Shown here piece after piece: positions 39,526 to 58,350 of a DNA stretch of 64,000 bases. The notes under the pieces are model-generated. The model was not told the origin of the DNA and searched no databases. It saw nothing but the letters and a program-made list of their open reading frames with translations. The stretch lies in IMG/VR virus record IMGVR_UViG_3300042511_000879, positions 62,001 to 126,000 of that record; one strand, given 5' to 3'. Numbering within the stretch: the first letter of the stretch is position 1; every line of letters starts with the position of its first letter. The position numbers were made by a program, and so were the translations under genes.

Positions 39526-39541
39526 AATATTTCTTTGTTTT

Positions 39542-39583
39542 AATTAGATATGTAAATATAATCAATATTGTTGAAAGGGGAAA
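39542..39583 (-). promoter_or_regulatory. Class-1 promoter
   Basis: TTTC(39583-39580)-N19-TATATTTA(39560-39553)CATATCTAATT, with TTAACA direct repeats upstream. Confidence 0.8.
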
Positions 39584-39778: not shown

Positions 39779-39792
39779 TTTTTCTTTGTTTT

Positions 39793-39860
39793 AATTAGAT
39801 ATGTAAATATAATCAAAAAAACCCAGATTCGAAAATCTGGGTTGTTAAAGTTTTGTTAAA
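39793..39860 (-). promoter_or_regulatory. Class-1 promoter with embedded terminator hairpin (copy B)
   Basis: TTTC(39834-39831)-N19-TATATTTA(39811-39804); hairpin AACCCAGAT/ATCTGGGTT at 39820-39843 differs by 1 nt from copy A. Confidence 0.8.
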
Positions 39861-40879: not shown

Positions 40880-41632
40880 TTATTTCTCAGGGTTTTCAAC
40901 TCTCCATTTGTCGTAACGATCTACCACGTCTTGAAGTATTTTAGCTCTTACAATATCTTTATTCTCAAAAACATGGACTCCAGTTCCTTTAATTCCGCTC
41001 ATCAACTTCATAAATCCTGGAAGACCAGCACTAACCTTTGGTATATCATATTGACTAATATCACCAGTAACTAGAACCTTAGAATTTTTACCCATACGGG
41101 TTGTGAATAACATTAATTGTTTAAATGATGCATTTTGAGCCTCATCTAGAATCATAAATGAATCATCAAAGGTATCTCCTCGCATAAAGGCAAGTGGTTT
41201 AAATTCAATAGCACCTGAAGCGATCAGCCCTTCGGTTAATTCATCACCTACTATTTTTTTAAAATTTGAAATATATGATTGCATGTACGGATCAACTTTG
41301 TCTGCAATATCTCCAGGTAGGAATCCAAGTTTTTCTCCTGATTCTTGAATTGGTTTACATAGGATAATTTTTGAAACTCCTTTTGTTGCTAGCAACCATA
41401 GGGAAGTATAGCATGCAGTAAATGTTTTTGAGGTACCTGCTGGACCTGAACAGAACGTTATTTCATTTTTTTTGATTTTTTCAAAATAATCATATTGAGA
41501 TGGTTTTAATTGTACTCCTACTAAATCTAATTCTTTTACTACTGTTTTTTTAGGACGTCCAATTGGAGCTTTTGTAGTCGTAGGTTTTGCCTTAGTTGTT
41601 TTTGATTTACTTTCCACTGTTCTTTTTTGCAT
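40880..41632 (-). CDS. phoH: PhoH-like ATPase
   Basis: GPAGTSKT, LGFLPGD, PLAFMRG, ILDEAQN and GDISQYD motifs. Confidence 0.93.
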   Translation of the reverse strand: MQKRTVESKSKTTKAKPTTTKAPIGRPKKTVVKELDLVGVQLKPSQYDYFEKIKKNEITFCSGPAGTSKTFTACYTSLWLLATKGVSKIILCKPIQESGEKLGFLPGDIADKVDPYMQSYISNFKKIVGDELTEGLIASGAIEFKPLAFMRGDTFDDSFMILDEAQNASFKQLMLFTTRMGKNSKVLVTGDISQYDIPKVSAGLPGFMKLMSGIKGTGVHVFENKDIVRAKILQDVVDRYDKWRVENPEK

Positions 41633-41649
41633 ACAATTTTTGTATATAT

Positions 41650-41907
41650 TTAATCACCAGTCATCATGACAAGTTCTTTTAATTTCTTGAGTGATTCACA
41701 TTTTTCATATTCCTCTAACTCAACAAAATATTCTATTAGGACATCTACGAATTTACTTCGCTGTCCAATTCCATGTGGAATATCTATCGTGTGACTTCCG
41801 TCGTTATAAACAATAAATCTATTAATGGTTTTTGTAAAATTTCTAGTAAGTATGTAATAGCTGGACCTCATCAGAGAATCTCTTTCCTCCCCTGTTATAT
41901 CTCCCAT
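41650..41907 (-). CDS. Small protein with C-terminal UVR-like motif (1 of 4)
   Basis: YFVELEEYEKCESLKKL. Confidence 0.65.
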   Translation of the reverse strand: MGDITGEERDSLMRSSYYILTRNFTKTINRFIVYNDGSHTIDIPHGIGQRSKFVDVLIEYFVELEEYEKCESLKKLKELVMMTGD

Positions 41908-41996
41908 CTTTCAGTGGTGTTTTTAAAAGTGGCTATAGCCACATATAGTATATATTTTAACCAGTAGAATTAAAGATATCCGGGCTAAAAAGGTTA

Positions 41997-42260
41997 CTAT
42001 ATTATATTGCTTGATAACATTTCAATTATCTTTTTAAGTTCTTTACATTTTTCATAATCTTCATTATCTTTAAAAAACTTAAGAACCGTTTGCACTCCTT
42101 CTATTTTCTCTTCAATAGTTCCATCGTGCTTTAAGGCACCCATTTTACCATTAACAATAGAAGAGTACATTGCCTCCATCATATCTTCTTTAGAGGCTTC
42201 GTGTAGTCTTTTTATAAATTTTCTTGATTCCTCCGGGCTTTCTTCTTCAATACTGCTCAT
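41997..42260 (-). CDS. Small protein with C-terminal UVR-like motif (2 of 4)
   Basis: FFKDNEDYEKCKELKKI; overlaps the end of dnaJ. Confidence 0.65.
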   Translation of the reverse strand: MSSIEEESPEESRKFIKRLHEASKEDMMEAMYSSIVNGKMGALKHDGTIEEKIEGVQTVLKFFKDNEDYEKCKELKKIIEMLSSNII

Positions 42261-43080
42261 TTGGATTTTTTATCTTTTTAAGTAATTCTATTTCAGTTTC
42301 AGTTAAAGTTATAGGAAGAGTTCTAAGTTTCACCATAAGATTTCCGAATCCTTCTGCGTTATATATTGGCATTCCTTGTCCAACAACTCGTAGAAGTTGT
42401 GAATCATGAGAACCTTGAGGAACTTTGATTTTAATAGAATTTAGTTTGGTGTGGATTTCAAATTCTCCTCCGAGTAGAAGGTCAATCCAGTTTAGGGTTA
42501 ATTCAACATAGATATCACTGCCATTAACAATAAGTTCAGGGTCTGGTAAAACATTGACAGTTAATATGATATCGCCAGGAGGCGCAGATGAATTTACAGG
42601 GTGATTTGCTCCTTTACCTGGGACTTTAAGTTTTGTTCCAGTTTGGATTCCTCGAGGTATATTGATATTAAATCCACCAGTACCGACATCAATATATTTT
42701 CTGACACCTTCATATGATTCCTCAACTGTTATATTTAATGTAACTCTAACATCATATCCTCTTGCTTGACCGCCAAAGGATTGATTAAACATGTCGGTAA
42801 AATCACCTCCAAAACCATGGAAAGCGTGTTGCCATGCAGATGTGGTGTCCTGGTTTCTTTGGAAATTTCCAAATGGATTATGTCCTCTAGATGGATTATC
42901 ATACTGTTCTTTTTTGACAGGGTCAGAAAGAGTTTCGTATGCTTCAGATATTTTTTTGAATTGCGAGTCGTCTCCTCCTGTTTTGTCAGGATGGTGTTCT
43001 TTTACAAGCTTTCTATAAGATTTTTTAATCTCTTCTGGAGTAGCACCCTTTGAAACGTTAAGAGTTTCGTAATAATTCAT
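42247..43080 (-). CDS. dnaJ: DnaJ-family co-chaperone lacking the zinc finger (CbpA-like)
   Basis: J domain YYETLNV...HHPDK...AYETLSD, G/F-rich linker, C-terminal substrate-binding repeats, no CxxCxGxG. Confidence 0.92.
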   Translation of the reverse strand: MNYYETLNVSKGATPEEIKKSYRKLVKEHHPDKTGGDDSQFKKISEAYETLSDPVKKEQYDNPSRGHNPFGNFQRNQDTTSAWQHAFHGFGGDFTDMFNQSFGGQARGYDVRVTLNITVEESYEGVRKYIDVGTGGFNINIPRGIQTGTKLKVPGKGANHPVNSSAPPGDIILTVNVLPDPELIVNGSDIYVELTLNWIDLLLGGEFEIHTKLNSIKIKVPQGSHDSQLLRVVGQGMPIYNAEGFGNLMVKLRTLPITLTETEIELLKKIKNPNEQY

Positions 43081-43086
43081 TAGAGT

Positions 43087-43296
43087 CTATTTTTTGGAAT
43101 TTCTAACTCTAACTGTTTGTTTCATTACTGGAATTGGTGCAGATTTAACTTGTTTAATGCTATCTGCTTTTTTCTCGGCAACTAGAGCTGCTTGACCTTT
43201 TTTATAAGTTGCAATTTCTCTTAGTTGTTTGTTTTCCATACAGATTGCAATTCTTTCTAGACTATCTGCAATCTTTTTTAAATATTCTTCGTTCAT
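43087..43296 (-). CDS. Hypothetical protein
   Basis: ORF track; AATATATA motif at 43320-43327. Confidence 0.6.
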   Translation of the reverse strand: MNEEYLKKIADSLERIAICMENKQLREIATYKKGQAALVAEKKADSIKQVKSAPIPVMKQTVRVRNSKK

Positions 43297-43334
43297 ATCG
43301 ATATACTTTATTAGTACATTATATATTAAAGAAA

Positions 43335-43354
43335 AAAGGTCCTATAGGACCTTT
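43335..43354 (-). terminator. Intrinsic terminator
   Basis: Perfect palindrome AAAGGTCCTATAGGACCTTT followed on the minus strand by T6, over the stop of 43342..43635. Confidence 0.75.
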
Positions 43355-43635
43355 GCTTTCTTAAGTATCTTATTTATTTGGGCGCATTTTTCGTACTCTT
43401 CAAGCTCTTCAAAAAGCTCTAACATATCTCCTAGAATTTTAACAATAGGTTTAATATCAAGTTCTTGTTTTTCCATTAATTTAAAATCAACTCCTTTAGA
43501 AATTATTTCAGCATAATTTTCATTTGCAAGCTTGATTTTTAAATCATACATTACGTTATTCATTTCGGCTTCTTTTTTAATAGTGTCGATTTCGTCTTCT
43601 TGTTCTTCAAATAAATTGTTAAAGTCTTCGTCCAT
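43342..43635 (-). CDS. Small protein with C-terminal UVR-like motif (3 of 4)
   Basis: LFEELEEYEKCAQINKIL; has a class-1 promoter. Confidence 0.65.
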   Translation of the reverse strand: MDEDFNNLFEEQEDEIDTIKKEAEMNNVMYDLKIKLANENYAEIISKGVDFKLMEKQELDIKPIVKILGDMLELFEELEEYEKCAQINKILKKAKVL

Positions 43636-43650
43636 AATTATAAGGTTTTA

Positions 43651-43719
43651 ATTTGATATGTAAATATAATACAAATTCCTGACACAGAAAAACTTTTTAT
43701 CAAAAAGTTATTAACAATT
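43651..43719 (-). promoter_or_regulatory. Class-1 promoter (N18 variant)
   Basis: TTTC(43690-43687)-N18-TATATTTA(43668-43661)CATATC; upstream AATTGTTAATAAC box at 43707-43719. Confidence 0.7.
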
Positions 43720-44450
43720 TAAAATGGTACCTCATCTACCATATCCATTCCTGATATTTTAAGCATCACATTCATAGTGGCTTTAACATCTCCTTCACAA
43801 TATGTTTTTATTCTTTCAATACTACCATTCCAATACTCTTCAGTTGTACTACTTGCTTCCATTATAGTTTTAGGAGATGGAATATTAAGAGTGTTACAAA
43901 TTAAATCTAGTGATGCACTATTCCAACCTGCAAATTTCCAAATTTCATAAGTATCTACTAGACAGTTTTCCCAAGGTTTTTTCTTTTGTAAATGAAATTG
44001 ATGAGGTATTGCTACTCCGTTTACAATGGATCTTTTTATTAGATATGGAAAATCAAAGTTTTTAATATTATGTCCAGTAAATTGAACTGAAGGACTTTGA
44101 TTAAAAACAGCTTGAGCTGTACCCATAAACTCTTTAAGAATTTCTATTTCGCTACCTTTATAGAAAGAACGAATTTTTGAGGTTGTAATACCATCTTGGA
44201 ATTTAATTTGTCCCATAGAAATTACAATAACTTTGCTAAATTCTGGACTAAGCGCCGACATATGAGTATACATTTCCGCATCAGTAAGTTTTGCCAAATG
44301 AGATTCAGTATTTCTATGCTGTTCTGCTTTTTTTGCCCAATGCTTTATTCCGCCTGGTCTTTTAATACAGAATTCTTCGTAATTCGGATATTCTGAAGAT
44401 GTTTCAATGTCAATAAATAACATTGACTTTAGTTCGGTAGTATTATACAT
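43719..44450 (-). CDS. 3'-5' exonuclease, PolB-exonuclease-like (DEDD)
   Basis: LFIDIET, GHNIKNFDFPYL, KPWE...VDTYEIW and YCEGDV motifs; family common in Bacteroidota. Confidence 0.88.
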   Translation of the reverse strand: MYNTTELKSMLFIDIETSSEYPNYEEFCIKRPGGIKHWAKKAEQHRNTESHLAKLTDAEMYTHMSALSPEFSKVIVISMGQIKFQDGITTSKIRSFYKGSEIEILKEFMGTAQAVFNQSPSVQFTGHNIKNFDFPYLIKRSIVNGVAIPHQFHLQKKKPWENCLVDTYEIWKFAGWNSASLDLICNTLNIPSPKTIMEASSTTEEYWNGSIERIKTYCEGDVKATMNVMLKISGMDMVDEVPF

Positions 44451-44691
44451 TCTTTGAGTCGTTTAAATCTTTAAAAATCTTATAAATTGATATTGGGTAT
44501 ACACATTTTTTTACACTTCTATCTGACTTTTCATTCATCCAATAATATGGGACTCCATGTAATTTAGTCAGTGAATCAATTAAAGAAACTAATTGACCAT
44601 ACATAAGAATCCCTGCAAATTTAAAATAGTAATTCTCACCAATCTTTGGTTTAACTACGTAAATTTTAGGTTCTTTTTTATCTTTTGCCAT
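44443..44691 (-). CDS. Hypothetical protein
   Basis: ORF track; class-2 promoter at 44698-44724. Confidence 0.6.
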   Translation of the reverse strand: MAKDKKEPKIYVVKPKIGENYYFKFAGILMYGQLVSLIDSLTKLHGVPYYWMNEKSDRSVKKCVYPISIYKIFKDLNDSKNV

Positions 44692-44722
44692 ATACTAATT
44701 ATACACAAAAAAATAAAAAAGT

Positions 44723-44941
44723 TTAAAGATGTGTAGTGTCAACGTGGTCATGTGACTGTCGAAGTATCATATATCGATCATATGATATACTCATTTCGAT
44801 CCATCCTCCAGTAATAGATTTGGGTACTTCGTGATGGTCAATTATATAGTTTGGTGGGGTAGTAACTCTTTCTAATAAAAAGTCCATCATCAAATCTGAT
44901 TCTCTATTATGAACCCATATTTTTACAAATGTATTATTCAT
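44723..44941 (-). CDS. Hypothetical protein
   Basis: ORF track; overlaps the glycosyltransferase stop. Confidence 0.55.
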   Translation of the reverse strand: MNNTFVKIWVHNRESDLMMDFLLERVTTPPNYIIDHHEVPKSITGGWIEMSISYDRYMILRQSHDHVDTTHL

Positions 44942-46784
44942 GTTCGTTATATATTATATTTGCCGCCATCTCTTCTTGATTAAATCTTGACACTGTATTT
45001 AACGGTGCACCTGGATTTTCGTCATACGCCCAATCTTTTAATCCTAACTCTTCAAACCTGTTTTTGATTTGCTCGTTATAATAATAACCTATTGTACGTA
45101 CTCGTCTTTGAATATCTGCTCTTGATAGATTATGAGTATTCTGTCCATTTGCATTATTATATAAGAATTGAATATACCCTAATTTTGGTATTTTGCAAGT
45201 TATTGCTTTTAAGAAAGTTCTTACAACCAACTCATAATCATCGGCTATTACAAGACTTCTATTATGTCCTCCTATTTCAAAATAAGTAGATCGTCTCCAT
45301 GCTCTTACGTGATTTGGTACACCAACTATATGTCTAATTGTTTTAGGATTAATATTCTGTTGATTAGAAACATTTAGTGTCTTTCCAGCATACTCTTCTT
45401 TTCTATATGATCCGTATCCAAGCGCAAATCCTTCGCTATATGTTAAAGAATTCCAGTTTTCATCAACTTCAACAGTGTCATTAAAAAAGAATCCGGCTTC
45501 TGGATGTTTTTTAGCTGCTTTATAAAGGTCTTCAGTACACCATGGAACTAATAAATCGTCATGGTCTAATTCAGCTAAAATAAAACCTTTAGCCATTGAG
45601 CAACATCTCCATTTAACCTCACCAATATTTCCACCGCTTTTTTCTCTAAAATCATAAAGGCGTACTCTTGGGTCTTTTGCTGCAATAGATTCTGCTATTT
45701 TTAATGTTTTACCACCATCAGTAGAGTCATTTACTAGTACCCATTCCCAATTGTTGTATGTTTGGTCTAGCAGCGATTGATATGTATTAAATAGTTTTTC
45801 ACCAGTATTATATATTGGGGTAAAATATGATATCATTGAACTATCTTCTAATCCATCTGGGTTCAACAGACTTTCCATTAAACACTGATACGCGATTTGT
45901 CCAGCATCTCTAGTGGAAACTTCTTTGTCAAGATTTAACCATTTTCGTCTAAATTGAAGTGGCATGCTTGCCATTTCTGGAAAGTTTTCCCAAGATTCTC
46001 CTCTAGTTATAATAACGTCTGGTTTAAATGAGGCTAGGGATATTGTGATGTCTTTGTCATTTTTTAAATACTTAATCTCCAAACTATCATCTTCATAGTC
46101 AAGTATTTTAAGTGATTTTAATTCAGGCTCATCATGCCCAATATACAATACTTTAGGAACTTTTGCAGTTGATTTTTTCTGTAAGTAATTGTAGTGTGAT
46201 AGTACTCTTCCCGTAAATGTAAACCATTCAGGATGTTCGGCATGAACGGAACTTATAAAGATTCCATCAGCTTGATAATCAGGCAAATATGAATATTCAT
46301 ATTCATTATAAACATCAATACTAACAATATATTGAGCTAAATCAACTCCCTGCACTTTCATAAATTTAGGATATGCTTTTCTATATGTTAAGTTTGTAAA
46401 ATCTCTTCCGGCAACATGTTGTGAAACTACATGGATTTTTTTGTCTGGATTCTTTAAAGAAGATTGCAAAACATATTCATAGAAACCTTCATGCATGATA
46501 TTATCATCATCTAAAAAATAAACCCAACCATCTGATAATTTTGAAATTATGGCAGAACATTGAGGATATAACATTCCTATAGCATCTCCTTTTTCAAAAT
46601 GGTATGTTGTTAGATCGTCTTTTAAATCACATAGTAATTCTGCATCAATATCTTTAAGATTTGTAGTGTCAAATACTATGTGCCAATTTATTTCGCATCC
46701 ATTTGGTATATTGTTAAAGACAGATTCTTTAACAGTCTTTAAATTCTGTAGGCGCGTTGCTCGAGTTATTATACTAATTTTCAT
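44934..46784 (-). CDS. Tandem GT-A (GT2-like) glycosyltransferase, two catalytic domains
   Basis: Domain 1: ISIITRATR...WVYFLDDDN. Domain 2: ISYFTPIYN...WEWVLVNDSTDG...AELDHDD...ADDYEL. Confidence 0.88.
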   Translation of the reverse strand: MKISIITRATRLQNLKTVKESVFNNIPNGCEINWHIVFDTTNLKDIDAELLCDLKDDLTTYHFEKGDAIGMLYPQCSAIISKLSDGWVYFLDDDNIMHEGFYEYVLQSSLKNPDKKIHVVSQHVAGRDFTNLTYRKAYPKFMKVQGVDLAQYIVSIDVYNEYEYSYLPDYQADGIFISSVHAEHPEWFTFTGRVLSHYNYLQKKSTAKVPKVLYIGHDEPELKSLKILDYEDDSLEIKYLKNDKDITISLASFKPDVIITRGESWENFPEMASMPLQFRRKWLNLDKEVSTRDAGQIAYQCLMESLLNPDGLEDSSMISYFTPIYNTGEKLFNTYQSLLDQTYNNWEWVLVNDSTDGGKTLKIAESIAAKDPRVRLYDFREKSGGNIGEVKWRCCSMAKGFILAELDHDDLLVPWCTEDLYKAAKKHPEAGFFFNDTVEVDENWNSLTYSEGFALGYGSYRKEEYAGKTLNVSNQQNINPKTIRHIVGVPNHVRAWRRSTYFEIGGHNRSLVIADDYELVVRTFLKAITCKIPKLGYIQFLYNNANGQNTHNLSRADIQRRVRTIGYYYNEQIKNRFEELGLKDWAYDENPGAPLNTVSRFNQEEMAANIIYNEHE

Positions 46785-46834
46785 ATTATTTATATAATAA
46801 AAATGAAATTAGTTTATATTTTTTTGGGATTTAT

Positions 46835-47536
46835 CTAGATACCATGCTTGATTCGGTTAAAAAGCATGCTCTTCATAATTGGTAACATACAATCAGCGTA
46901 AGGAGGTGGTGTTGTTTTAAATTTTGCATCAAATCTAAAAAATCTATAAGAAGTACTTTCTAATTCTGTTCTTTTAATAAACTCAGAAATCTCTTTGATT
47001 GAATTTTCTAACTCTTCAACTTTCTTTAAATTAAACTCGCTCCAATTTATTTTAAAAGATGAAGGTTCTATATAAGAATAGACGTGAATTTTTTGATTTA
47101 CAATATCGATATAAAAAATGTACCCTTTGGTATTGAGATGCTTTTTCTCTGGAATCTCAGTAATTGTGCACTGTGATTCTACAATTCTCCATTTATCTCT
47201 AATAGTTCGATATAAATCTTCTAGTTTTTCTATTGCAACATCGCAAATATCATACATTGAATTGATACCATTAGTTTCTTCTGGATAATCATACTTTAAA
47301 GACATAGTATCAACATCAATTCCAGTAATTATTCTGGTTTTGCTTTCAATTTCGTCTCTTCCGTATTTAATATTATATAGTCTTTCGAGTTCTGTCTCTA
47401 CTTCTAAAATAGCAGAATACAAGTTATTAGCAGAAATCATTTTTTTAATTTTATCGATTCCGGCTAGTAGCTTGTAATATTTTAACTCATAGTCATGAGG
47501 TGGCTCTATTAGCCAATTTGTTTCAAAGACGTTCAT
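46835..47536 (-). CDS. Hypothetical protein
   Basis: ORF track; NWLIEPPHDYELKYYKLLA N-terminus. Confidence 0.65.
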   Translation of the reverse strand: MNVFETNWLIEPPHDYELKYYKLLAGIDKIKKMISANNLYSAILEVETELERLYNIKYGRDEIESKTRIITGIDVDTMSLKYDYPEETNGINSMYDICDVAIEKLEDLYRTIRDKWRIVESQCTITEIPEKKHLNTKGYIFYIDIVNQKIHVYSYIEPSSFKINWSEFNLKKVEELENSIKEISEFIKRTELESTSYRFFRFDAKFKTTPPPYADCMLPIMKSMLFNRIKHGI

Positions 47537-47597
47537 ACCTATATCTATCTTAAGTATAATAAATTATATAGGTATTTTTGTTTTATATTACTATAAT

Positions 47598-47909
47598 CTA
47601 GGACTTAGTTCTTTTAGTAATGGTGCTTTGAACTCTGTTTGGAGTTTTTCTAGGATTAACGGTAGTTAGTCCCCATTGTAGAATAAACCAACTTGCCTCT
47701 TTTTCAGCGGCTGCTTTTGAAATTTTAAGCACTTCTCGTATTCTTTCAACAGAATATTTAATAAATGTCTCTTCTTTCTCTGGAGTAGTTTTATAATCCA
47801 TGTACCATGACGGGTTTGTTTTAACATCTTCGTATGTTACTCCATGGTCCTTAAGCTGATGGTTAATCAATTCAACAAAAAGCTCTCTTTGTTTTTCTCG
47901 GTTTGTCAT
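47598..47909 (-). CDS. Hypothetical protein
   Basis: ORF track; operon packing. Confidence 0.6.
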   Translation of the reverse strand: MTNREKQRELFVELINHQLKDHGVTYEDVKTNPSWYMDYKTTPEKEETFIKYSVERIREVLKISKAAAEKEASWFILQWGLTTVNPRKTPNRVQSTITKRTKS

Positions 47910-48103
47910 AATGAAATTAATGAAATAAATGTATTTTTATCGTTTAGTCTTACAAAATCAGAATATGATATATCCACTAGGAATGAATCTTTAAAGTATG
48001 TCGGAGATATTGTAATTGGATACGTTTCTGCATCTAATTTTCCTTTAATTATTTTATCCAAATATTCAAGCTCGCCAGAATGTACGTAAAAATAGATTTT
48101 CAT
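47906..48103 (-). CDS. Hypothetical protein
   Basis: ORF track; abuts the clpP stop. Confidence 0.55.
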   Translation of the reverse strand: MKIYFYVHSGELEYLDKIIKGKLDAETYPITISPTYFKDSFLVDISYSDFVRLNDKNTFISLISL

Positions 48104-48790
48104 TTATTTTCTAGATTTTGATTTAACTGGATTAATAATCTCGTCGATTATACCGTACTTAAGTGCCTCTTCTGCGCTTAACCATAAATCTCGGGTAGCA
48201 TCAGACATAACCTGCTCTGGTTTCTTGTCACAATATGAACCTAACAAATTAAATAGTTCTTTGTTGACTTTTTGCCATTCTGCCCAGTCTATTTCGGCAT
48301 CTTGGATATTCCCACTGAATCCTCCTGAGGATTGGTGTAACATAGTAGTCGAGTGTCTTAGTGAACTTCTCTTGCCTTTAGTTCCAGCTCCTAATAGTAC
48401 TGAACCCATCGAAGCTGCCATTCCTGTATTTACTGTTTTGATATCAGATTTAATCCATTCCATAACGTCAATCATAGAAAGCCCTGATTTTACAGAACCT
48501 CCTGGACTATCAATATGCATTGTTATATCTCGGTCATCTGTGCTATCTAAAAACATTAATTGAGCTTGTACAATAGTTGACATATTGTCATTAACAGGCC
48601 CTGCAACCCACAATAATCGATCGATCATCAACCTTGAAAATATATCCATTTGAGTAGCTCTTAATTGTCTCTCTTCTAGAATATAAGGTGTCATTGATGA
48701 TTCAATTTGATTTTTATAGTAGTGCATGTTCATTGAACTTATGCCCTTGTCTAGCATTGCGTATCTTTCGAATTCTTTTCCGTGATTCAT
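48104..48790 (-). CDS. clpP: ATP-dependent Clp protease proteolytic subunit
   Basis: TPYILEER, DIFSRL, IDSPGGSV, GMAASMGSVLL (catalytic Ser) and MLHQ (catalytic His); Bacteroidota-type N-terminal extension. Confidence 0.96.
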   Translation of the reverse strand: MNHGKEFERYAMLDKGISSMNMHYYKNQIESSMTPYILEERQLRATQMDIFSRLMIDRLLWVAGPVNDNMSTIVQAQLMFLDSTDDRDITMHIDSPGGSVKSGLSMIDVMEWIKSDIKTVNTGMAASMGSVLLGAGTKGKRSSLRHSTTMLHQSSGGFSGNIQDAEIDWAEWQKVNKELFNLLGSYCDKKPEQVMSDATRDLWLSAEEALKYGIIDEIINPVKSKSRK

Positions 48791-49092
48791 TATAGTTTCT
48801 TTAATAGTTTTTTAATTTGAGTACATCTTTCGTATTTTTCATGGAATGTATAGAAGTCCAGGCTTTTTAATATTGATTGCTTATAAGAACTTTTAGGAAG
48901 ATCTGCATACTGTATATCTCCATTTTCATGGACAAAATAACATAATAATGTTTCTCTATCTTCTTTGTTAATATTTGCTTCGATAAAATCTACAATTCTG
49001 TCGTGAAATTCGCAATCGTTTGTAATTGAATTAAACCCATCTCCATCTATGTAGAATTCAGGGATATCTGTTCCTTTCATGCACTCAATCAT
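48790..49092 (-). CDS. Small protein with C-terminal UVR-like motif (4 of 4)
   Basis: FYTFHEKYERCTQIKKLL; its stop overlaps the clpP start at 48790. Confidence 0.65.
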   Translation of the reverse strand: MIECMKGTDIPEFYIDGDGFNSITNDCEFHDRIVDFIEANINKEDRETLLCYFVHENGDIQYADLPKSSYKQSILKSLDFYTFHEKYERCTQIKKLLKKL

Positions 49093-49943
49093 ATCTCTTT
49101 TATATTAAGATACCCTGATAATAAATTATAATATGTTTCTTTGGTCAACACATTATCTATCGTGGTATTTATATTATTTATCATCGAAATTCCTGAAGGG
49201 GTTAAACTCATAACTCCATTTTCAATATTAAAAATAGGTTCTAATAATTCCATTAAGTATTGTTTCTCGTGAAGAGGCTCGTGAACGATCCTTTCGGCTA
49301 ATTCAAAATGTCTTTCGTAAAAGTGGATGTTATCAGCGTAATGATGGTATACTCCAAGTTCTAATTCTGGGTAAGTTGACTTTAACCAAAGGTAAACATG
49401 TTGTTGGACGAATGCAAAGAATGGAGCATCAAATGTAAGTCCATAAAAAATATCATTAGATCGCATTTGAACTTTCATATCTAGCTTATTGTGTCTGATT
49501 GAAAAGTTTAGGTACATAGTACATACAAAATCTTTATTACCTTCAAACTGGTATTTTGGCTGATTTAAGAAAGCAATTGCTTGTCTAGTGTTCTTGTCTG
49601 CTTTAAGAGAATCGACTACCCATTGTAATTGTTCTCCGAAAAGAAGAGAACCGTAATTTGAATTAATTTCGTTTGTTCCAGGATTTGTTATGTTTTTCCA
49701 GAATCCAGAAAATTTATTAATGTAGTCAATATTGGTATCTTTATTAAGGTACCATGCTAATTCGCCGGCAAAATACTTCCAATTAAACTCTCTACTATTA
49801 AAATTAGCAAATGGTTCTTTTGGATTAATTGGATATCCGGCATAAAGTAATTCGGTAACTTCAAGGTCTCTTGGTTTAGAGACCTCTCCGTGTATTTTTA
49901 TATCTGAAATTATGTGTTTAAATTGGTGTGAGAATGTTTTCAT
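49089..49943 (-). CDS. Thymidylate-synthase-family enzyme, dCMP hydroxymethylase (T4 gp42)-like
   Basis: EINSNYG, DFVCT (catalytic Cys), MRSNDIFYGLTFD (Asp at the pyrimidine-specificity position) and HFYERHF, paralleling gp42 EINSNYG/DFMCT/RSNDVVFGFRND/YSRHF. Confidence 0.8.
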   Translation of the reverse strand: MKTFSHQFKHIISDIKIHGEVSKPRDLEVTELLYAGYPINPKEPFANFNSREFNWKYFAGELAWYLNKDTNIDYINKFSGFWKNITNPGTNEINSNYGSLLFGEQLQWVVDSLKADKNTRQAIAFLNQPKYQFEGNKDFVCTMYLNFSIRHNKLDMKVQMRSNDIFYGLTFDAPFFAFVQQHVYLWLKSTYPELELGVYHHYADNIHFYERHFELAERIVHEPLHEKQYLMELLEPIFNIENGVMSLTPSGISMINNINTTIDNVLTKETYYNLLSGYLNIKEI

Positions 49944-49956
49944 GTTTATAATTTTA

Positions 49957-50880
49957 TTATATTACGTCAAAAAAGAACATGTGAAAGAATCTTGCGTTCT
50001 CAATAGCATCGCCAAAATATTTACTTGGCGCATGAATTTGTTTAGAATCGAATAGAACTAAACGGTTGTATACATTACCAACCTCATCGATTTTATCAAA
50101 ATTAGTTGAATCATAAAAATTTGCTTGAGCATTCTTGCCTTTAAATGTATCTTCAAACACAGAATAGTCTTCAAAATTATCAAATCTTTTTTTACCAGTA
50201 TTTTTACCAGAATAGAAAGATGTACCTGTTTCGAATGGAGCATCTTTAGTTAAGAATACCATTCCTGCATACATCTGACTGTCAACATGAAATACGGGTA
50301 GATCGCTTGCTACACAATATTGGAATACTCCATTTGCATAACTTTCATAATTCCAGTTTATAATTTCGCGGCCAATTATCTTTTCTAATTTCTCTTTAGT
50401 GCCATCTAGAATAAACCTAGTTTGACTTCTTTTACCTTTGTGATAATCAGAGGGGTTGTATTCTAGATTATTCATTGCAAAATCTCTAATAAAGTCAGGA
50501 TCTGCATAAAAATTATCAACTACAATTAGACTTTTATTTTCATTATAGAATCCAGAATAATAAGCAATAAAATTATCAATGCTTCCTGGATTATAAATAA
50601 GTTCTCCAAATTTAACTTGAATCTTTGCGCCTTTAGAGATATTAAAAACTAATCCAACACTATCATCTTCTAAAGGATAATATTTAGAAACATCTGGACG
50701 ACTAATAACTGTTAATGGTATTTCAATATCATCGACTATCAATGAACTAACTGGTTTAAAGGAATCACCGTCTTTTACTAGAATCCAACCAGTTGCATTA
50801 TAGTTATTATCGGATACTTTGGTAATTGAATCAAAAAACCAAAAAACGTTTGGATCTTTTGTAAAAGTGTTATAAATCAT
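49957..50880 (-). CDS. 2OG-Fe(II) oxygenase-like protein with an extra N-terminal beta domain
   Basis: LIVVDNFYADPD start of the catalytic domain, HVD...H (QIHAP)...R iron/2OG motif, NRLVLFDS. Confidence 0.75.
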   Translation of the reverse strand: MIYNTFTKDPNVFWFFDSITKVSDNNYNATGWILVKDGDSFKPVSSLIVDDIEIPLTVISRPDVSKYYPLEDDSVGLVFNISKGAKIQVKFGELIYNPGSIDNFIAYYSGFYNENKSLIVVDNFYADPDFIRDFAMNNLEYNPSDYHKGKRSQTRFILDGTKEKLEKIIGREIINWNYESYANGVFQYCVASDLPVFHVDSQMYAGMVFLTKDAPFETGTSFYSGKNTGKKRFDNFEDYSVFEDTFKGKNAQANFYDSTNFDKIDEVGNVYNRLVLFDSKQIHAPSKYFGDAIENARFFHMFFFDVI

Positions 50881-50906
50881 ATGTTTGTTTTTTGTTTATT
50901 ATACAA

Positions 50907-52880
50907 TTATTTAAAAGAAAGTTTCTCATCTCCTTTTTTATATGAAATCGTGTACGTTTTATTTCCTTTAACAATTTCTTTAGCTAAAATACCATCTGCT
51001 AATAAGTCTTCAACATACGTTTGAATTGCTCTTTTAAGAGGTCTAGCTCCATATTGAGCATCATACCCACGTTCTGCTAAAAATACTATCGCCGTTTTTG
51101 CAACTTTAATAATATATTCTTGTTCAACCATTCTTTCAATTACTTTTTGAATTTCGATTTCTGCAATTTTAGCAACATCTTCTTGTTTTAATCCATCAAA
51201 CAATACTATTTCATCCAATCTATTTAAGAATTCCGGAGCAAATTTGTTTTTAAGCTCTTTTCTGATAACAGTTTCCATTTCCATTTTGTGGGTGGCCGTA
51301 GAACTTGAACTTGAGAATCCGATTCCAGCCCCAAATTCTGCAACTCTTTTTGCTCCAACATTACTTGTCATAATAATGATAGTATTCGTAAAGTCAATAG
51401 TTCTACCAAGAGTATCTGTTAAACGACCCTCATCTAAAACCTGTAACAAGATATTGAAAATATCTGGGTGGGCCTTTTCAACTTCATCAAATAATACTAC
51501 TGAATATGGTTTACGTCGGACTTGTTCTGTTAACTGTCCACCATCCTCATGTCCTTCATATCCCGGAGGAGAACCAATAAGTCTACTTACGTTAAACTTT
51601 TCTTGGTATTCTGACATGTCGATTCTGATTAAAGAATCCTCGCTTCCGAAATAATATTCAGAAAGGGCTTTAACAGTTTCAGTTTTACCAACTCCAGTAG
51701 GTCCAATAAACATAAATGAACCGATAGGTTTTTTAGATGAACTTACTCCAGTTCGGCTTCTTTTAATAACTCTACATAGACCTTCAACCGCAGTATCTTG
51801 CCCGATAATCATCGCTTTTAATTCATTTTCCATATCAATAACAATTCTGCTCTCGTCATCGGTCATTCTTGTTACCGGAATTCCAGTAGATTCAGAAATT
51901 ACTTCAGCAATATCTTCATAAGTTACTGCCTTCTTATTTAGTCTAAGCGTCTCCTCCCATTCTTTGGTTCTTTTTGTTATCTCTTCTCGCTTACTAATTT
52001 CAAGGTCTCTTAAATTTCCGGCTTTTTCATAATTAGTAGCATCTGCTGCTTTTAACTTTGCGGCTTTTAATTTATCAGCTTCAATTTCAAGTTCTTTAAT
52101 AATTTCTGGAATTTTTACCTCTTTTAAATGTACTTTTGCTCCAGCCTCGTCCATAACATCAATTGCTTTGTCCGGTAATTCTCTTTGAGTAATATATCGG
52201 TCAGATAATACTACACAGGCTTTAATAGCGTCAGGAGTATATGATACTGAATGGAAGTCTTCGTAATTTGGTTTAATTCTGTCTAGAATTTCGATTGCAT
52301 CTTCAAGGGATGGTGGGTCTATAAAGATTTCTTGGAATCTTCTGGTAAGAGCTCCATCGGTTTCAATATTTTCACGATACTCATCGATTGTCGTAGCACC
52401 AATACATTGTACTTGTCCTCTTGCCAATGCCGGTTTTAAGATATTACTAGCATCTAATGAACCACTTACACCACCAGCGCCTACAATTGTGTGAATCTCA
52501 TCAATAAAGACAATAACATCTGGGTTCTCTTTAAGTTCATCAACAATGTTTTTCATTCGTTCCTCAAATTCTCCACGGTATTTTGTACCTGCAACTACGT
52601 TTGCAATATTAAGAGCAATTATACGTTTATTAAGAAGAGTCATTGCAACTTTCTTTTCAACAATACGTTGCGCAATTGCTTCAACTAGTGCAGTTTTACC
52701 AACCCCAGGATCCCCTAAAATAATTGGATTGTTTTTCTTTCTACGAGAAAGGATTTGACATATTCTATGGACCTCTTTTTCTCTTCCGATGATAGGGTCA
52801 AGTTTCCCATCTGCCGCTAGTTTAGTTAAGTCCTCTCCGAATTGGTCAATGAATGGAGTATTTGTTTTCTTACTGGTCAT
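50907..52880 (-). CDS. clpC: ClpC-type Hsp100 ATPase lacking the Clp N-terminal repeat domain
   Basis: Two AAA+ modules (GDPGVGKT and GPTGVGKT), UVR middle domain (NYEKAGNLRD), IGF loop (GAGIGFS); sequence begins directly at the D1 pre-helix. Confidence 0.92.
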   Translation of the reverse strand: MTSKKTNTPFIDQFGEDLTKLAADGKLDPIIGREKEVHRICQILSRRKKNNPIILGDPGVGKTALVEAIAQRIVEKKVAMTLLNKRIIALNIANVVAGTKYRGEFEERMKNIVDELKENPDVIVFIDEIHTIVGAGGVSGSLDASNILKPALARGQVQCIGATTIDEYRENIETDGALTRRFQEIFIDPPSLEDAIEILDRIKPNYEDFHSVSYTPDAIKACVVLSDRYITQRELPDKAIDVMDEAGAKVHLKEVKIPEIIKELEIEADKLKAAKLKAADATNYEKAGNLRDLEISKREEITKRTKEWEETLRLNKKAVTYEDIAEVISESTGIPVTRMTDDESRIVIDMENELKAMIIGQDTAVEGLCRVIKRSRTGVSSSKKPIGSFMFIGPTGVGKTETVKALSEYYFGSEDSLIRIDMSEYQEKFNVSRLIGSPPGYEGHEDGGQLTEQVRRKPYSVVLFDEVEKAHPDIFNILLQVLDEGRLTDTLGRTIDFTNTIIIMTSNVGAKRVAEFGAGIGFSSSSSTATHKMEMETVIRKELKNKFAPEFLNRLDEIVLFDGLKQEDVAKIAEIEIQKVIERMVEQEYIIKVAKTAIVFLAERGYDAQYGARPLKRAIQTYVEDLLADGILAKEIVKGNKTYTISYKKGDEKLSFK

Positions 52881-53144: not shown

Positions 53145-53189
53145 AGTATATTTATTTTAGATTTATATTGAGTTATTCCAATTTGTTTC

Positions 53190-54590
53190 AGGGTAAACTT
53201 AAAGAACCTTTGAGTTAAGTGAAAAATTTTTATTCTGTAATTCAGACCGGGTGCACCCTCCTATTGCGTGGGAAAATTTGGGTTTCAATCATCAAAAAAA
53301 TGAAATAATCTACCAGAACGATTGAACCGTTGAGGCCGTTTGAAATACATAAAGTCACATTGAGGGACTATTGGGCGGCCCTCCCCTAGCCCTATTAATA
53401 CCTATTGGCACATCGGTCGTCACAGTATACTGAGCACTCTATTGGAGGTATCAGAATGGGTGTGTCCTTCCTGTAGATACTCTATATAATAACGGATGTA
53501 CACTATAGGGGTTTTTAAATATCGTATACTATTAGATAGAATAGTTCTCTTTTTAATTAGAATCCCTACAGCACGCCCCCACCCCGCCCCTTTGGGACTC
53601 TATGGGATAGAGGTCAATTTTATTTTTTTCTATAGGATTTTTTTGAGAGCTTAGAGACTTGGAGTACCTCAGAGAGGTGAGAGAGCGGTGAGTCACCCTA
53701 CCTTTCACCTTTGAGACTTGGATACTTCTTATATCCTCATAGGACCTATTAGTTTCAACGGGTTACTCTTTATTTCACAGTACACTTCGTGCCTGACACA
53801 GTACCCTCAGGTCAATCTGAGCCAACCATCGGTAATTGGTAACGGTCTTATTGGTTAATTATAGGTTCTTTATGTTTCTAGTAACGGTGATATCCATTCT
53901 ATCGGTCTCAATTGGTCTTTGGTCACCTTCCGGACCTGGGTAATTTTTTGGGTAGGGCAACATTGAAGTACTCTGAGGGTGGGATGGACCATTGGCTACC
54001 ATCGGAGGACCATCAGAGGACCATTGACGCTGGGAGGGTCTCTCAACATTGAGGTATTGATATTCCCGGACGGGGATAATTCGTCCACTTCTATGAAACA
54101 CATTTATCAAAGGTCTATATTAGTTAGGAAGTCTAGAGCTTTGATCCTACAGTCCTTTGAGAACCTCTAGACCTGGCTTTTATAAGGATCCACCCTGGGT
54201 GCTGACCGCTCCGTAGACCTGCCCAACCGGTATTGAGGGTCAATGCACACGTGCCCTAGAGTCCAGTGGTGACTGGAAGAGTCCTGCTCTACCCTAGTTA
54301 CCCTGTGTCTGTAGTGAACTATTAGTATTATTGTCATTCTTGTGCAGAGCACACCTGCATTGTGCAGGCATTGACCTGCATTGCCTATTGCAACAGTTGA
54401 TCAGTGCACTACAGGTAGATAGGTCTATTGCCCTTACAACAATATTGAGCCTATTGAGCATATTGAACCTTTGAGGACATTGAGTAATCATTGAATTGCA
54501 TTGATTATTGCTACAGGGCATTGAGCCGGGCATTGCTACAGGACATTGATCCTGGACATTGCGCCGGGCATTGATCTGGGGACATTGATC
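53190..54590. other. Non-coding, GC-richer, repeat- and hairpin-rich island (left)
   Basis: About 1.4 kb without a credible gene in an otherwise fully packed genome; many (C/T)ATTG and GGACCAT motifs, hairpins and C runs. Confidence 0.7.
54350..54590 (+). repeat. Degenerate short-period (C/T)ATTG array
   Basis: About 19 ATTG copies between 54359 and 54587, mostly spaced 9-14 nt; the later copies read GG(A/G)CATTG. Confidence 0.85.
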
Positions 54591-54593
54591 CTC

Positions 54594-55876: not shown

Positions 55877-55887
55877 AATGGTGTGTT

Positions 55888-56032
55888 TTAATTAGATATG
55901 TAAATATAATCATTATTTGTGATTCCGGAAACTGTTTGCGCAAGTATTTTCAGAAAGTTATTAACAATTGTTGTTCATAAGTTTTTTGAGAAACTGTTTC
56001 GGGATTCATATAAATTGATTATATTTACATAT
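55888..56032. promoter_or_regulatory. Divergent pair of class-1 promoters
   Basis: Minus: TTTC(55931-55928)-N19-TATATTTA(55908-55901). Plus: TTTC(55997-56000)-N19-TATATTTA(56020-56027). Confidence 0.85.
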
Positions 56033-57780: not shown

Positions 57781-57793
57781 ACAAAGAAACACC

Positions 57794-58340: not shown

Positions 58341-58350
58341 ACACCACATT

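What the first reader, a model, noticed from the sequence alone, without database searches (positions are those of the whole stretch)
41650..52880. Candidate phage proteolysis system: ClpC + ClpP + DnaJ with four UVR-motif putative adaptors
Seen: four unrelated 85-100-aa proteins end in the same motif, F...E.YE[KR]C..[LI].K[LI] (41650, 41997, 43342, 48790). One is translationally coupled to clpP, and three surround dnaJ. The phage ClpC carries the related M-domain motif NYEKAGNLRD and an IGF loop. Known: UVR coiled coils pair head-to-head, the ClpC M-domain UVR controls resting state and adaptor-dependent activation, and IGF loops dock on ClpP. Inference: the small proteins are an adaptor toolkit, with UVR binding the ClpC M-domain and the variable N-terminus selecting host or phage substrates. 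The conserved Cys replacing the usual Ala could add redox or metal control. They sit under different promoter classes, hinting at timed substrate switching.
Basis: partly seen in the sequence, partly recalled or inferred. Interest (0 to 1): 0.8.

Follow-up and report, generated by a model that had tools for sequence, protein, structure and literature searches.

The report
Phage small proteins sharing UVR-like hairpin
Four small genes of an uncultured large aquatic phage end in the same short two-helix motif, which defines a very large, unannotated family of phage proteins; one of the four is always wedged between the thymidylate synthase gene and clpP in the phage's own Clp protease gene block and may regulate that protease, but the family as a whole is not tied to Clp.

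Summary
Four minus-strand ORFs (85, 87, 97 and 100 aa) end in h..hh.[YF]F...E.YE[KR]C..hKKh. A profile of the motif scores them 35-54 bits; the next best ORF in the window scores 8. Their N-termini show no detectable homology to one another.

The motif defines a huge unannotated family: at least 1,108 clusters (50% identity) of 43-207-aa proteins, with dozens of unrelated N-termini. AlphaFold2 models it as a C-terminal helix-turn-helix hairpin. Kinship with the UVR domain is plausible but weak.

ClpC, ClpP and DnaJ are genuine. The ClpC lacks its N-domain but keeps the M-domain tip residues.

The adaptor idea is only partly supported. The 100-aa member sits, translationally coupled, between thyA and clpP in all 31 distinct versions of the ClpC-ThyA-X-ClpP block, and upstream of none of 14 other ClpPs. 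The other three members track DnaJ-PhoH. Relatives sit beside a topoisomerase and in an operon with an RNA ligase. A complete 60.8-kb phage carries a member but no Clp genes.

Best reading: a generic docking or dimerising hairpin, of which one member was probably recruited as a ClpC/ClpP accessory. Binding to ClpC is untested.

The parts
48790..49092 (-). Motif protein X (100 aa), translationally coupled to thyA upstream and clpP downstream. Modelled as an alpha/beta N-terminal part plus a C-terminal helical hairpin (helices 67-83 and 87-99).
   Evidence: junctions ATGA and TAATG; AF2 pLDDT 82, pTM 0.72; present in 31/31 distinct ClpC-ThyA-X-ClpP blocks; invariant P11, L50, E85, C90.
43342..43635 (-). 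Motif protein (97 aa), all-helical: a long helix 4-47 and a C-terminal hairpin 62-77/81-93. It appears monocistronic.
   Evidence: AF2 pLDDT 86; promoter-like element upstream, terminator-like hairpin at its stop; HMM 53.7 bits.
41997..42260 (-). Motif protein (87 aa); its start lies 14 nt inside the 3' end of dnaJ.
   Evidence: the arrangement is conserved in relatives with DnaJ identity down to about 45%; HMM 40.8 bits.
41650..41907 (-). Motif protein (85 aa), 17 nt upstream of phoH. Its N-terminal part is weakly related to the group that contains the Pfam-UVR-positive relative.
   Evidence: (hhalign probability 30%, P 5e-4 against the L017 group); HMM 49.8 bits.
50907..52880 (-). ClpC-type double-AAA+ unfoldase (657 aa) without an N-domain. 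Two Walker A/B sets, an M-domain with NYEKAGNLRD, and an IGF loop.
   Evidence: AAA, AAA_lid_9, AAA_2, ClpB_D2-small; (aligns to S. aureus ClpC residues 154-794; Y284=F436, R291=R443, D292=D444).
51978..52091 (-). M-domain segment of ClpC that carries the UVR-type core (YE.A[AG].[LF]RD).
   Evidence: Y, E, A, R and D are invariant in the 34 diverse phage ClpC segments aligned.
48104..48790 (-). ClpP serine peptidase (228 aa) with the Ser, His and Asp motifs and an N-terminal extension of about 30 aa.
   Evidence: PF00574, 7e-56; 160 bits to S. pneumoniae ClpP; GMAASMG, HQ and RD motifs aligned.
49089..49943 (-). Thymidylate synthase, part of the conserved ClpC-DUF6445-ThyA-X-ClpP block.
   Evidence: PF00303 on the identical gene in L001-L004.
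49957..50880 (-). DUF6445 protein lying between clpC and thyA.
   Evidence: PF20043, 5.7e-12.
42247..43080 (-). DnaJ-type co-chaperone (277 aa): J domain with HPD plus the DnaJ C-terminal domain. No zinc-finger domain was detected.
   Evidence: PF00226 2e-23; PF01556 2e-29; HPD seen in the translation.
43087..43296 (-). Conserved 69-aa ORF between motif ORF 43342 and dnaJ. It lacks the motif; function unknown.
   Evidence: present in all close relatives; HMM -0.1 bits.
40880..41632 (-). PhoH-like ATPase, directly downstream of motif ORF 41650.
   Evidence: PF02562; the DnaJ-PhoH trio arrangement is conserved.
43645..43668 (-). One copy of a 24-nt promoter-like element (TATATTTACATATCAAATTAAAAC), 10 nt upstream of the ATG of ORF 43342.
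   Evidence: 7 copies in the window against 0.01 expected; TTTACA-16-TATAAT.
43335..43354 (-). Terminator-like hairpin plus T-run at the stop codon of ORF 43342.

Best explanation
The four ORFs belong to a very large, so far unannotated family of small phage proteins. Each protein has a variable N-terminal part followed by a conserved C-terminal helix-turn-helix hairpin of about 30 residues (consensus [IL]..[ML][IL].[YF]F...EEYEKCA.[LI]KK[IL]). The hairpin is a divergent, Cys-containing relative of the UVR hairpin.

I read the hairpin as a protein-protein docking or pairing module and the N-terminal part as the source of specificity.

In this phage lineage one member, X (48790-49092), has been fixed inside the phage's own Clp operon. 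It is most likely an accessory or regulator of the N-domain-less ClpC/ClpP machine. The proposed mechanism is as follows. The hairpin, whose tip Tyr-Glu matches the F436-E437 tip of the ClpC M-domain, pairs with the M-domain. This competes with the M-domain head-to-head contacts that keep an N-less ClpC inactive, so it switches the protease on or directs it.

The three members around dnaJ/phoH use the same module. There is no specific evidence that their partner is ClpC.

Shown: the family, the motif, the modelled hairpin, the conserved Cys, the gene order and the features of ClpC.
Inferred: docking, M-domain pairing and activation.
For: Family and modularity:
- 590 close homologues, all unnamed.
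- 1,108 clusters at E<=1e-3 in an exhaustive search of 1.84 billion representatives. The top 150 are 43-207 aa with the motif near the C-terminus.
- 16 plus 42 mutually unrelated N-terminal groups at BLAST level. There is no profile-level N-terminal similarity among the four window groups.

Hairpin and UVR kinship:
- AF2 models have pLDDT 82 and 86, with helices 67-83/87-99 and 62-77/81-93.
- Relative L017:9803-10144 passes the Pfam UVR threshold: 21.6 bits as a whole protein and 24.7 bits as the isolated hairpin, against a cut-off of 21.5.
- ESM Atlas neighbours are viral ~100-aa clusters, 13-57% Pfam-UVR-positive, with TM 0.77 to a close look-alike of X.
- hhalign aligns EEYEKCA..+ with QDYEKAAKLRD of the phage ClpC M-domain (P 0.003).

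Clp link of X:
- 31/31 distinct ClpP variants in ClpC(>=66%)-DUF6445-ThyA-X-ClpP blocks have X. 0/14 ClpPs without that ClpC clade have it.
- Both junctions are tight or overlapping in nearly all variants.
- A second, unrelated-N-terminus motif protein lies in the same-strand cluster as a 51%-identical N-less ClpC.

Mechanistic rationale:
- The phage ClpC lacks the N-domain but keeps Y284/R291/D292, equivalent to F436/R443/D444.
- Published work shows that deltaN-ClpC forms M-domain-mediated head-to-head ring dimers that bind ClpP but are proteolytically inactive. Breaking the M-domain contact (F436A) makes it highly active (PMC12583610).
- UVR-domain proteins are enriched among plastid CLPC1 interactors, and the adaptor CLPF carries a UVR domain (PMC8889267).
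Against: - None of the four window proteins reaches Pfam UVR at E<=1. Only 2 of 48 and 1 of 149 family members do.
- hhalign probability against the ClpC M-domain is only 10%.
- Profile searches of PDB sequences and Foldseek searches give nothing significant.
- The R-D pair of the UVR and M-domain core is replaced by K-K or other residues.
- Many family members lie in non-Clp neighbourhoods: after a topoisomerase subunit, in an RNA-ligase/kinase operon and near baseplate genes.
- A complete 60,850-bp circular phage genome has a member (30 bits) but no ClpC, ClpP, DnaJ, PhoH or ThyA.
- Related phages with an N-less ClpC directly upstream of ClpP have no motif ORF within 10 kb on either side.
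- X is coupled to thyA as tightly as to clpP. Where an insertion occurs it stays with thyA in 3 variants and with clpP in 1.
- The perfect co-occurrence may be inherited synteny within one phage lineage.
- No interaction was or could be tested.
Confidence: 0.4

Rival explanations
1. One reading: all four small proteins are a toolkit of adaptors for the phage ClpC. Each docks on the M-domain by UVR-UVR pairing and delivers different substrates at different times.
For: - The same hairpin occurs in all four.
- All lie within 11 kb of clpC/clpP.
- The ClpC has lost its N-domain, so adaptors would have to use the M-domain.
- There are precedents of UVR-containing ClpC partners.
- Transcription units differ: 43342 has its own promoter-like element, while 41997 and 48790 are operon-internal.
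Against: - In more distant relatives the three DnaJ/PhoH-linked members keep their place beside DnaJ-PhoH while clpP lies 12-20 kb away.
- The family occurs in a Clp-less complete phage and in many unrelated contexts.
- UVR similarity is weak.
Confidence: 0.15
2. The hairpin is simply a self-association (homodimerising, four-helix-bundle-forming) scaffold reused by many unrelated small phage proteins. Each protein works with whatever its N-terminal part binds, such as ThyA, DnaJ, PhoH or topoisomerase. None has anything to do with Clp.
For: - N-terminal diversity is extreme and neighbourhoods are diverse.
- A member occurs in a Clp-less genome.
- X is coupled to thyA as tightly as to clpP.
- 41997 overlaps dnaJ.
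- Y, C, L and I of helix 2 fall on one face, as expected for a packing interface (read directly from the sequence).
- UVR hairpins of UvrB are known to self-pair (established knowledge, not tested here).
Against: - E, Y, E and C at the turn and the start of helix 2 are invariant across the family. This includes the 47-sequence set retrieved without using the motif. That is more than a generic coiled-coil scaffold needs, and Ala would serve for packing as it does in UVR.
- X is absent from every ClpP locus that lacks the specific ClpC clade.
Confidence: 0.25
3. The hairpin mimics a host UVR hairpin and targets a host protein that uses one. Candidates are host ClpC, UvrB/UvrC of nucleotide excision repair, or the nuclease-UVR proteins common in Bacteroidota. 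The family would then be a host-takeover module.
For: - Members occur in phages without their own Clp.
- The hosts are probably Bacteroidota. 15 of 22 genome-collection hits lie in Bacteroidota MAG contigs, and the related 'moraphage' lineage is predicted to infect Flavobacteriia (PMC12619734).
- Bacteroidota nuclease-UVR proteins appear among structural look-alikes, but at low TM.
Against: There is no direct evidence for any host target. Similarity to canonical UVR is weak. MAG binning of phage contigs is only indirect evidence of host.
Confidence: 0.12
4. The small proteins are substrates rather than adaptors. The C-terminal element would be a recognition tag that makes them short-lived through ClpCP, or a metal- or redox-sensing site (E-x-Y-E-K-C) that controls their stability.
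For: - The position is strictly C-terminal, a median of 5 residues from the end in the top 150 representatives.
- Cys and two Glu are invariant.
- Adaptors of Clp systems are often substrates themselves (PMC8889267).
Against: - The element is a well-predicted structured hairpin rather than a disordered tail.
- A single Cys cannot form a metal site on its own.
- Members exist in a Clp-less phage.
Confidence: 0.08

Closest known systems
UVR domain (Pfam PF02151; C-terminal hairpin of UvrB, UvrC, the ClpC M-domain, McsA, plant CLPF/EXE/UVR1-4)
   Same: A helix-turn-helix hairpin of about 30-35 residues with an aromatic-Glu pair at the start of helix 2 ([FY]E[KR].). It is often C-terminal and is used for protein-protein pairing. 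One family member passes the Pfam threshold. Viral look-alike clusters are partly UVR-positive.
   Different: Ala becomes an invariant Cys. The R-D pair is replaced, mostly by K-K. An extra invariant Glu sits two residues before the Tyr, and a conserved [YF]F sits in helix 1. The four window proteins do not hit PF02151 at all. The carriers are 43-207-aa phage proteins rather than repair enzymes or unfoldases.
ClpC adaptors and activators that act on the M-domain (MecA; also McsA/McsB, CLPF-CLPS1, MdfA)
   Same: Small partner proteins encoded with or near clpC/clpP. MecA activates ClpC by displacing M-domain head-to-head contacts (PMC5699869, abstract listed; PMC12583610). McsA and CLPF contain UVR domains (CLPF; McsA: from my own knowledge, not checked here).
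   Different: No sequence or fold similarity to MecA, ClpS or McsB was detected. MecA also needs the ClpC N-domain, which this phage ClpC lacks. Function is untested.
Phage-encoded Clp components (ClpP, ClpA/ClpX-like ATPases and the adaptor ClpS in jumbo phages; the ClpA-like near-core gene of 'moraphages')
   Same: Large phages are already known to carry ClpP, Clp ATPases, DnaJ and even an adaptor, ClpS (PMC7824862; PMC12619734). The window's lineage (contigs of 160-256 kb, probable Bacteroidota hosts) fits this picture.
   Different: The passages of those papers that I searched mention no UVR-like small-protein family. They also do not mention the conserved ClpC-DUF6445-ThyA-X-ClpP block or the absence of the ClpC N-domain.
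S. aureus deltaN-ClpC (engineered N-domain deletion)
   Same: The phage ClpC starts at the position equivalent to residue 154 of S. aureus ClpC and keeps the aromatic M-domain tip. It is therefore a natural counterpart of the engineered deltaN-ClpC, which is held inactive by M-domain contacts.
   Different: The behaviour of the phage protein is unknown. Its tip residue is Tyr rather than Phe, and its ClpP has an N-terminal extension of about 30 aa.

Membership tests
UVR domain (PF02151) | Scores above Pfam's gathering threshold (21.5 bits) | tested here: not met
   No UVR hit at E<=1 for any of the four window proteins. The threshold is met by relative L017:9803-10144 (21.6 bits whole, 24.7 bits as the isolated hairpin), by 2 of 48 hairpin segments and by 1 of 149 representatives.
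UVR domain (PF02151) | Helix-turn-helix hairpin of about 35 residues | tested here: met
   AF2 models place helices at 67-83/87-99 (pLDDT about 90 in that part) and at 62-77/81-93. These are predictions, not solved structures.
UVR domain (PF02151) | Core signature [FY]-E-x-A-A-x-h-R-D | tested here: not met
   The family has Y-E-[KR]-C-x-x-h-K-K. hhalign against the phage ClpC M-domain profile aligns only 13 columns, with probability 10% and P 0.003.
UVR domain (PF02151) | Pairs with another UVR hairpin (self or hetero) | not testable with these tools
   No complex prediction or binding assay is available here.
ClpC adaptor (MecA / ClpS / McsB / CLPF type) | Homology to a known adaptor family | tested here: not met
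   Pfam, PHROGs, PDB profile searches and Foldseek give no significant hit. The only related results are E 3.7-8.6 Foldseek hits to McsA and a MecA fragment, which are not significant.
ClpC adaptor (MecA / ClpS / McsB / CLPF type) | Binds ClpC and changes its ATPase, assembly or substrate choice | not testable with these tools
   Requires biochemistry or complex modelling.
ClpC adaptor (MecA / ClpS / McsB / CLPF type) | Gene co-occurrence with clpC beyond shared ancestry | tested here: inconclusive
   X is present in 31/31 against 0/14 ClpP loci, but all within one syntenic lineage. A second ClpC clade has a motif ORF three genes downstream. Against this, family members occur in a Clp-less complete genome and in other contexts.
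ClpC (class I Hsp100 unfoldase that docks on ClpP) | Two AAA+ modules with Walker A/B, a short UVR-type M-domain and an IGF-type ClpP-docking loop | tested here: met
   Pfam AAA, AAA_lid_9, AAA_2 and ClpB_D2-small. Walker A at residues 56 and 393, Walker B at 123 and 461, IGF at residue 520 onward. 730 bits to S. aureus and B. subtilis ClpC, and IGF aligns with their AGF loop.
ClpC (class I Hsp100 unfoldase that docks on ClpP) | N-terminal Clp_N (double Clp repeat) domain | tested here: not met
   Query residues 2-645 align to residues 154-794 of S. aureus ClpC, and there is no Clp_N hit. The same holds for the 655-682-aa phage relatives.
ClpP (S14 peptidase) | ClpP fold with the Ser-His-Asp catalytic motifs | tested here: met
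   PF00574 at 7e-56. GMAASMG, HQ and RD motifs align with S. pneumoniae ClpP.
DnaJ/Hsp40 | J domain with the HPD tripeptide plus the C-terminal substrate-binding domain | tested here: met
   PF00226 and PF01556. HPD is present in the translation. No zinc-finger domain hit, so this is not a class A DnaJ.

The most novel reading that the evidence does not exclude
The 'EEYEKC hairpin' is a phage-specific mimic of the ClpC M-domain tip. More than a thousand kinds of small phage proteins would use it to plug into ClpC-type unfoldases, whether the phage's own N-domain-less ClpC or the host's ClpC in Bacteroidota. This would release the M-domain lock and redirect the protease to targets chosen by their variable N-termini. 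It would be a large, unrecognised class of viral protease-hijacking adaptors, with the invariant Cys adding redox or metal control.
Probability: 0.15. Interest if true: 0.85.

Novelty: new variant of a known kind. Interest (0 to 1): 0.58.

Why it matters
How ClpC-type unfoldases are switched on is an active question, and ClpC is an antibiotic target. This phage lineage carries a natural N-domain-less ClpC together with its own ClpP and a small, invariably co-encoded hairpin protein. That makes a compact system for testing whether capping the M-domain alone can activate such a machine.

Separately, the motif defines one of the larger unannotated families of small phage proteins: at least 1,108 clusters with no Pfam or PHROGs family. 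Its modular build and invariant E-x-Y-E-K-C core point to a common partner or chemistry. Identifying that partner would annotate thousands of 'hypothetical' early genes in abundant aquatic phages.

Tried and rejected
- Megablast and tblastn of the region and of several family members against GenBank phages gave no matches. The single exception was MW202828.1.
- PHROGs found no family for any member tested.
- Profile searches of PDB sequences with two hairpin alignments returned only chance YEKC matches, with no UvrB or ClpC.
- Foldseek of both AF2 models against PDB gave nothing at E<0.6. The McsA and MecA hits at E 3.7-8.6 are too weak to use.
- I considered a TPR-like reading of 'YEKA/C'. 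It gets only low-TM look-alikes and no Pfam TPR hit, so I dropped it.
- The fifth 'YEKC' at 47740 lies in an alternative frame inside gene 47598-47909 and scores 8 bits. I treat it as chance.
- I looked for hidden N-terminal homology between the four groups and found none.
I replaced it with a DNA pattern scan.
- One marine metatranscriptome holds contigs of a relative about 92% identical across 41.1-45.9 kb. DNA carry-over cannot be excluded, and the data give no information on transcript ends or timing.
- Whole-genome presence or absence of Clp genes could not be established for the large IMG/VR contigs that carry other family members, because only 10 kb on each side can be fetched.

Full report
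**What the window is.** The window is AT-rich (about 32% GC), and nearly all of its genes lie on the minus strand. It has no tRNA genes or Rfam hits and no nucleotide match in GenBank phages. Identical or near-identical genes occur on many metagenomic and IMG/VR contigs of 160-256 kb. It is therefore part of an abundant, uncultured large phage. A recently described aquatic jumbo-phage lineage, the 'moraphages', has a ClpA-like near-core gene, PhoH and DnaJ, and is predicted to infect Flavobacteriia. It looks like the same or a related group (PMC12619734). A DNA pattern for F...EEYEKCA found 22 places in the genome collection. Fifteen of these lie in contigs binned with Bacteroidota MAGs. That is consistent with Bacteroidota hosts, but it is indirect evidence.

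**The observation.** All four ORFs exist at the stated coordinates and end in the same element.
- A six-frame regex scan finds the full motif only in these four ORFs, 16-21 residues from the C-terminus.
- A profile of the element scores them 35-54 bits. The next best ORF in the window, an out-of-frame chance hit at 47666-47827, scores 8.2 bits.
- On 12,626 ORFs from 204 loci the profile gives 263 hits at 18 bits or more. On the reversed sequences it gives none, even at 8 bits.
thyA/X overlap as ATGA, X/clpP as TAATG, and ORF 41997 begins 14 nt inside dnaJ.
- With the hairpin removed, the four N-terminal parts share no detectable similarity by BLASTP or by profile-profile comparison.
- Each of the four has its own well-conserved orthologue group.

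**The neighbours.**
- The 657-aa protein is a bona fide ClpC-type unfoldase: two AAA+ modules, Walker A/B pairs, the NYEKAGNLRD M-domain core and an IGF loop.
- It aligns to S. aureus ClpC residues 154-794, so the whole N-domain is missing. Y284, R291 and D292 correspond to F436, R443 and D444.
- The YE.A[AG]..RD core is invariant in the 34 diverse phage ClpC segments aligned.
- ClpP has the catalytic motifs.
- DnaJ has a J domain with HPD and the C-terminal domain.

**What the motif is.**
- AlphaFold2, run with family alignments, models X as a short strand, a helix and a beta-hairpin followed by a helical hairpin at 67-83/87-99 (pLDDT 82).
- It models the 97-aa protein as all-helical, ending in a hairpin at 62-77/81-93 (pLDDT 86).
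- Neither model has a significant PDB neighbour.
- The link to UVR is real but thin. The four window proteins do not hit PF02151 at E<=1. One relative that has R-D after the Cys passes the curated threshold. Only 2 of 48 hairpin segments and 1 of 149 representatives do so.
- A profile-profile comparison with the phage ClpC M-domain aligns just the EEYEKCA/QDYEKAA core, with probability 10% and P 0.003.
- ESM Atlas neighbours are viral clusters of about 100 aa, of which 13-57% are UVR-positive.
- I therefore call it a divergent, UVR-like hairpin. It does not qualify as a member by Pfam's criterion.
- The Cys that replaces the UVR Ala is invariant in 47 X-relatives retrieved through ClpC/ClpP, down to 23% identity, while the neighbouring Lys varies (K/R/T/S/M).
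- Y, C, L and I of helix 2 fall on one helical face. This is read from the sequence. The Cys is therefore probably at a packing interface, but its invariance is unexplained.

**How big the family is.**
- An exhaustive HMM search of 1.84 billion representative proteins finds 1,108 clusters at E<=1e-3. The top 150 are all 43-207 aa, and nearly all carry the motif at the C-terminus.
- Their N-termini fall into the groups already seen plus 42 further BLAST-unrelated groups.
- No Pfam or PHROGs family covers them.
- In IMG/VR the motif occurs in small proteins of many low-GC phages. One caveat applies: that scan used the pattern E[EDK]YEKCxx[LI], so the Cys in those loci is conserved by construction.

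**Association with Clp.**
- In loci retrieved with ClpP or ClpC, every one of 31 distinct ClpP variants that sits in a ClpC(>=66% identity)-DUF6445-ThyA-X-ClpP block has X.
- None of 14 ClpPs with a more distant ClpC, or with no ClpC nearby, has X.
- Both junctions of X are tight or overlapping in nearly all variants. Where insertions occur, X stays with thyA three times and with clpP once.
- A second clade of N-less ClpC (51% identity) has a motif-type protein with an unrelated N-terminus at the end of a ClpC-kinase-RNA ligase-cREC cluster.
- The other three window members keep their places around DnaJ-PhoH in relatives where DnaJ identity falls to about 45% and clpP lies 12-20 kb away.
- Other family members sit directly after a topoisomerase subunit in a T4-like replication module, among unknown genes, or near baseplate genes.
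- The complete circular 60,850-bp genome MW202828.1 has a clear member (30 bits) between a primase-helicase gene and a helicase gene. It has no ClpC, ClpP, DnaJ, PhoH or ThyA.
- The family is therefore not Clp-specific. Only X has a lineage-level link to Clp, and inherited synteny could explain that link.

**Mechanism.**
- Published work on S. aureus ClpC shows that deleting the N-domain gives planar hexamers. These pair head-to-head through their M-domains and bind ClpP, but degrade nothing. Adding F436A, which breaks the M-domain contact, makes the enzyme as active as MecA-stimulated wild type, with relaxed specificity (PMC12583610).
- The phage ClpC is a natural deltaN form that keeps the aromatic tip. 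It plausibly needs something to open that lock.
- X presents a Tyr-Glu hairpin tip and is made together with ClpP, so it is the obvious candidate.
- In plastids, UVR-domain proteins are enriched among CLPC1 interactors, and the adaptor CLPF has a UVR domain (PMC8889267).
- All of this is inference. No binding or activity was tested.
- I give 0.4 to the layered explanation: a generic docking hairpin, with X recruited as a ClpC/ClpP accessory acting on the M-domain.

**Promoters.**
- ORF 43342 is preceded, 10 nt upstream of its ATG, by one of seven copies of a 24-nt element (0.01 expected by chance) that contains TTTACA-16-TATAAT. It is followed by a terminator-like hairpin.
- ORFs 41997 and 48790 are internal to the dnaJ and thyA-clpP units.
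- ORF 41650 follows a palindrome plus T-run.
- The four are thus in different transcription units, but timing is unknown.
- A marine metatranscriptome holds contigs of a relative about 92% identical over 41.1-45.9 kb. This does not prove transcription.

**Comparison and novelty.** Phage-encoded ClpP, Clp ATPases, DnaJ and the adaptor ClpS are already known in jumbo phages (PMC7824862; PMC12619734). The following were not mentioned in the passages of the papers I searched, and are absent from the Pfam and PHROGs libraries I scanned:
- the very large EEYEKC-hairpin family;
- its modular build and invariant Cys;
- the fixed ClpC-DUF6445-ThyA-X-ClpP block with an N-domain-less ClpC.

I rate this a new variant of a known kind: a UVR-like pairing hairpin and a candidate Clp accessory. 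It is of moderate-to-good interest, and its main claim still needs the binding experiment.

Noticed in passing
window 39537-39560(-), 39788-39811(-), 43645-43668(-), 55885-55908(-), 56221-56244(+), 57759-57782(+), 58319-58342(+): A 24-nt element, TATATTTACATATC[TA]AATTAAAAC, occurs seven times (0.01 expected), each time just upstream of a gene start. It contains TTTACA-16-TATAAT. It is probably one promoter class of this phage, and it marks divergent units around 55.9-58.3 kb.
   Followed up: partly
window 53145-54593: A 1.45-kb stretch next to clpC has no ORF longer than 83 aa and a higher GC content (about 39% against 32%). It has no Rfam or tRNA hit and no GenBank phage match. In relatives it is kept in the same place at only 69-85% nucleotide identity where ClpC is 95-97% identical at the protein level. 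Its nature is unknown.
   Followed up: partly
window 49957-52880 and relatives (L063-L151): A thymidylate synthase and a DUF6445 protein are fixed between clpC and clpP in all relatives with ClpC identity of 66% or more. This is an odd pairing of nucleotide metabolism with a protease operon, and it is unexplained.
   Followed up: partly
L161-L192 (e.g. L171:9953-14496): A different phage clade has the cluster N-less ClpC, AAA_33 kinase, T4-type RNA ligase, cREC_REC domain protein and a motif-type small protein (EDYETC). This is an RNA-repair-like cassette joined to a ClpC, with no ClpP nearby.
   Followed up: partly
L209:7219-7554 (MW202828.1 56218-56553): The family member in this complete Clp-less phage carries an extra C-terminal tail with CxC...CxxC, which looks like a zinc ribbon. 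The same genome encodes GroEL/GroES instead of Clp or DnaJ.
   Followed up: no
window 41908-41996: The palindrome GTGGCTATAGCCAC followed by TTTT lies between ORFs 41997 and 41650. It looks like a terminator for the dnaJ unit, or a 5'-UTR hairpin of ORF 41650.
   Followed up: no
window 23589-24803, 21359-22651, 44934-46784: The phage also encodes an S1 RNA-binding-domain protein, an amidoligase-like protein and a 616-aa family-2 glycosyltransferase. TATAAATA-like boxes resembling T4 late promoters precede several large presumed structural genes and the glycosyltransferase gene.
   Followed up: no
P0093 (metagenomic relative of ORF 41650): In a 106-aa variant the sequence after EEYEKC switches to an unrelated basic tail (…CAILQKKIVDINNPPQKKRGRPKK…). 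This may be a recombinant or a frame-changed form.
   Followed up: no
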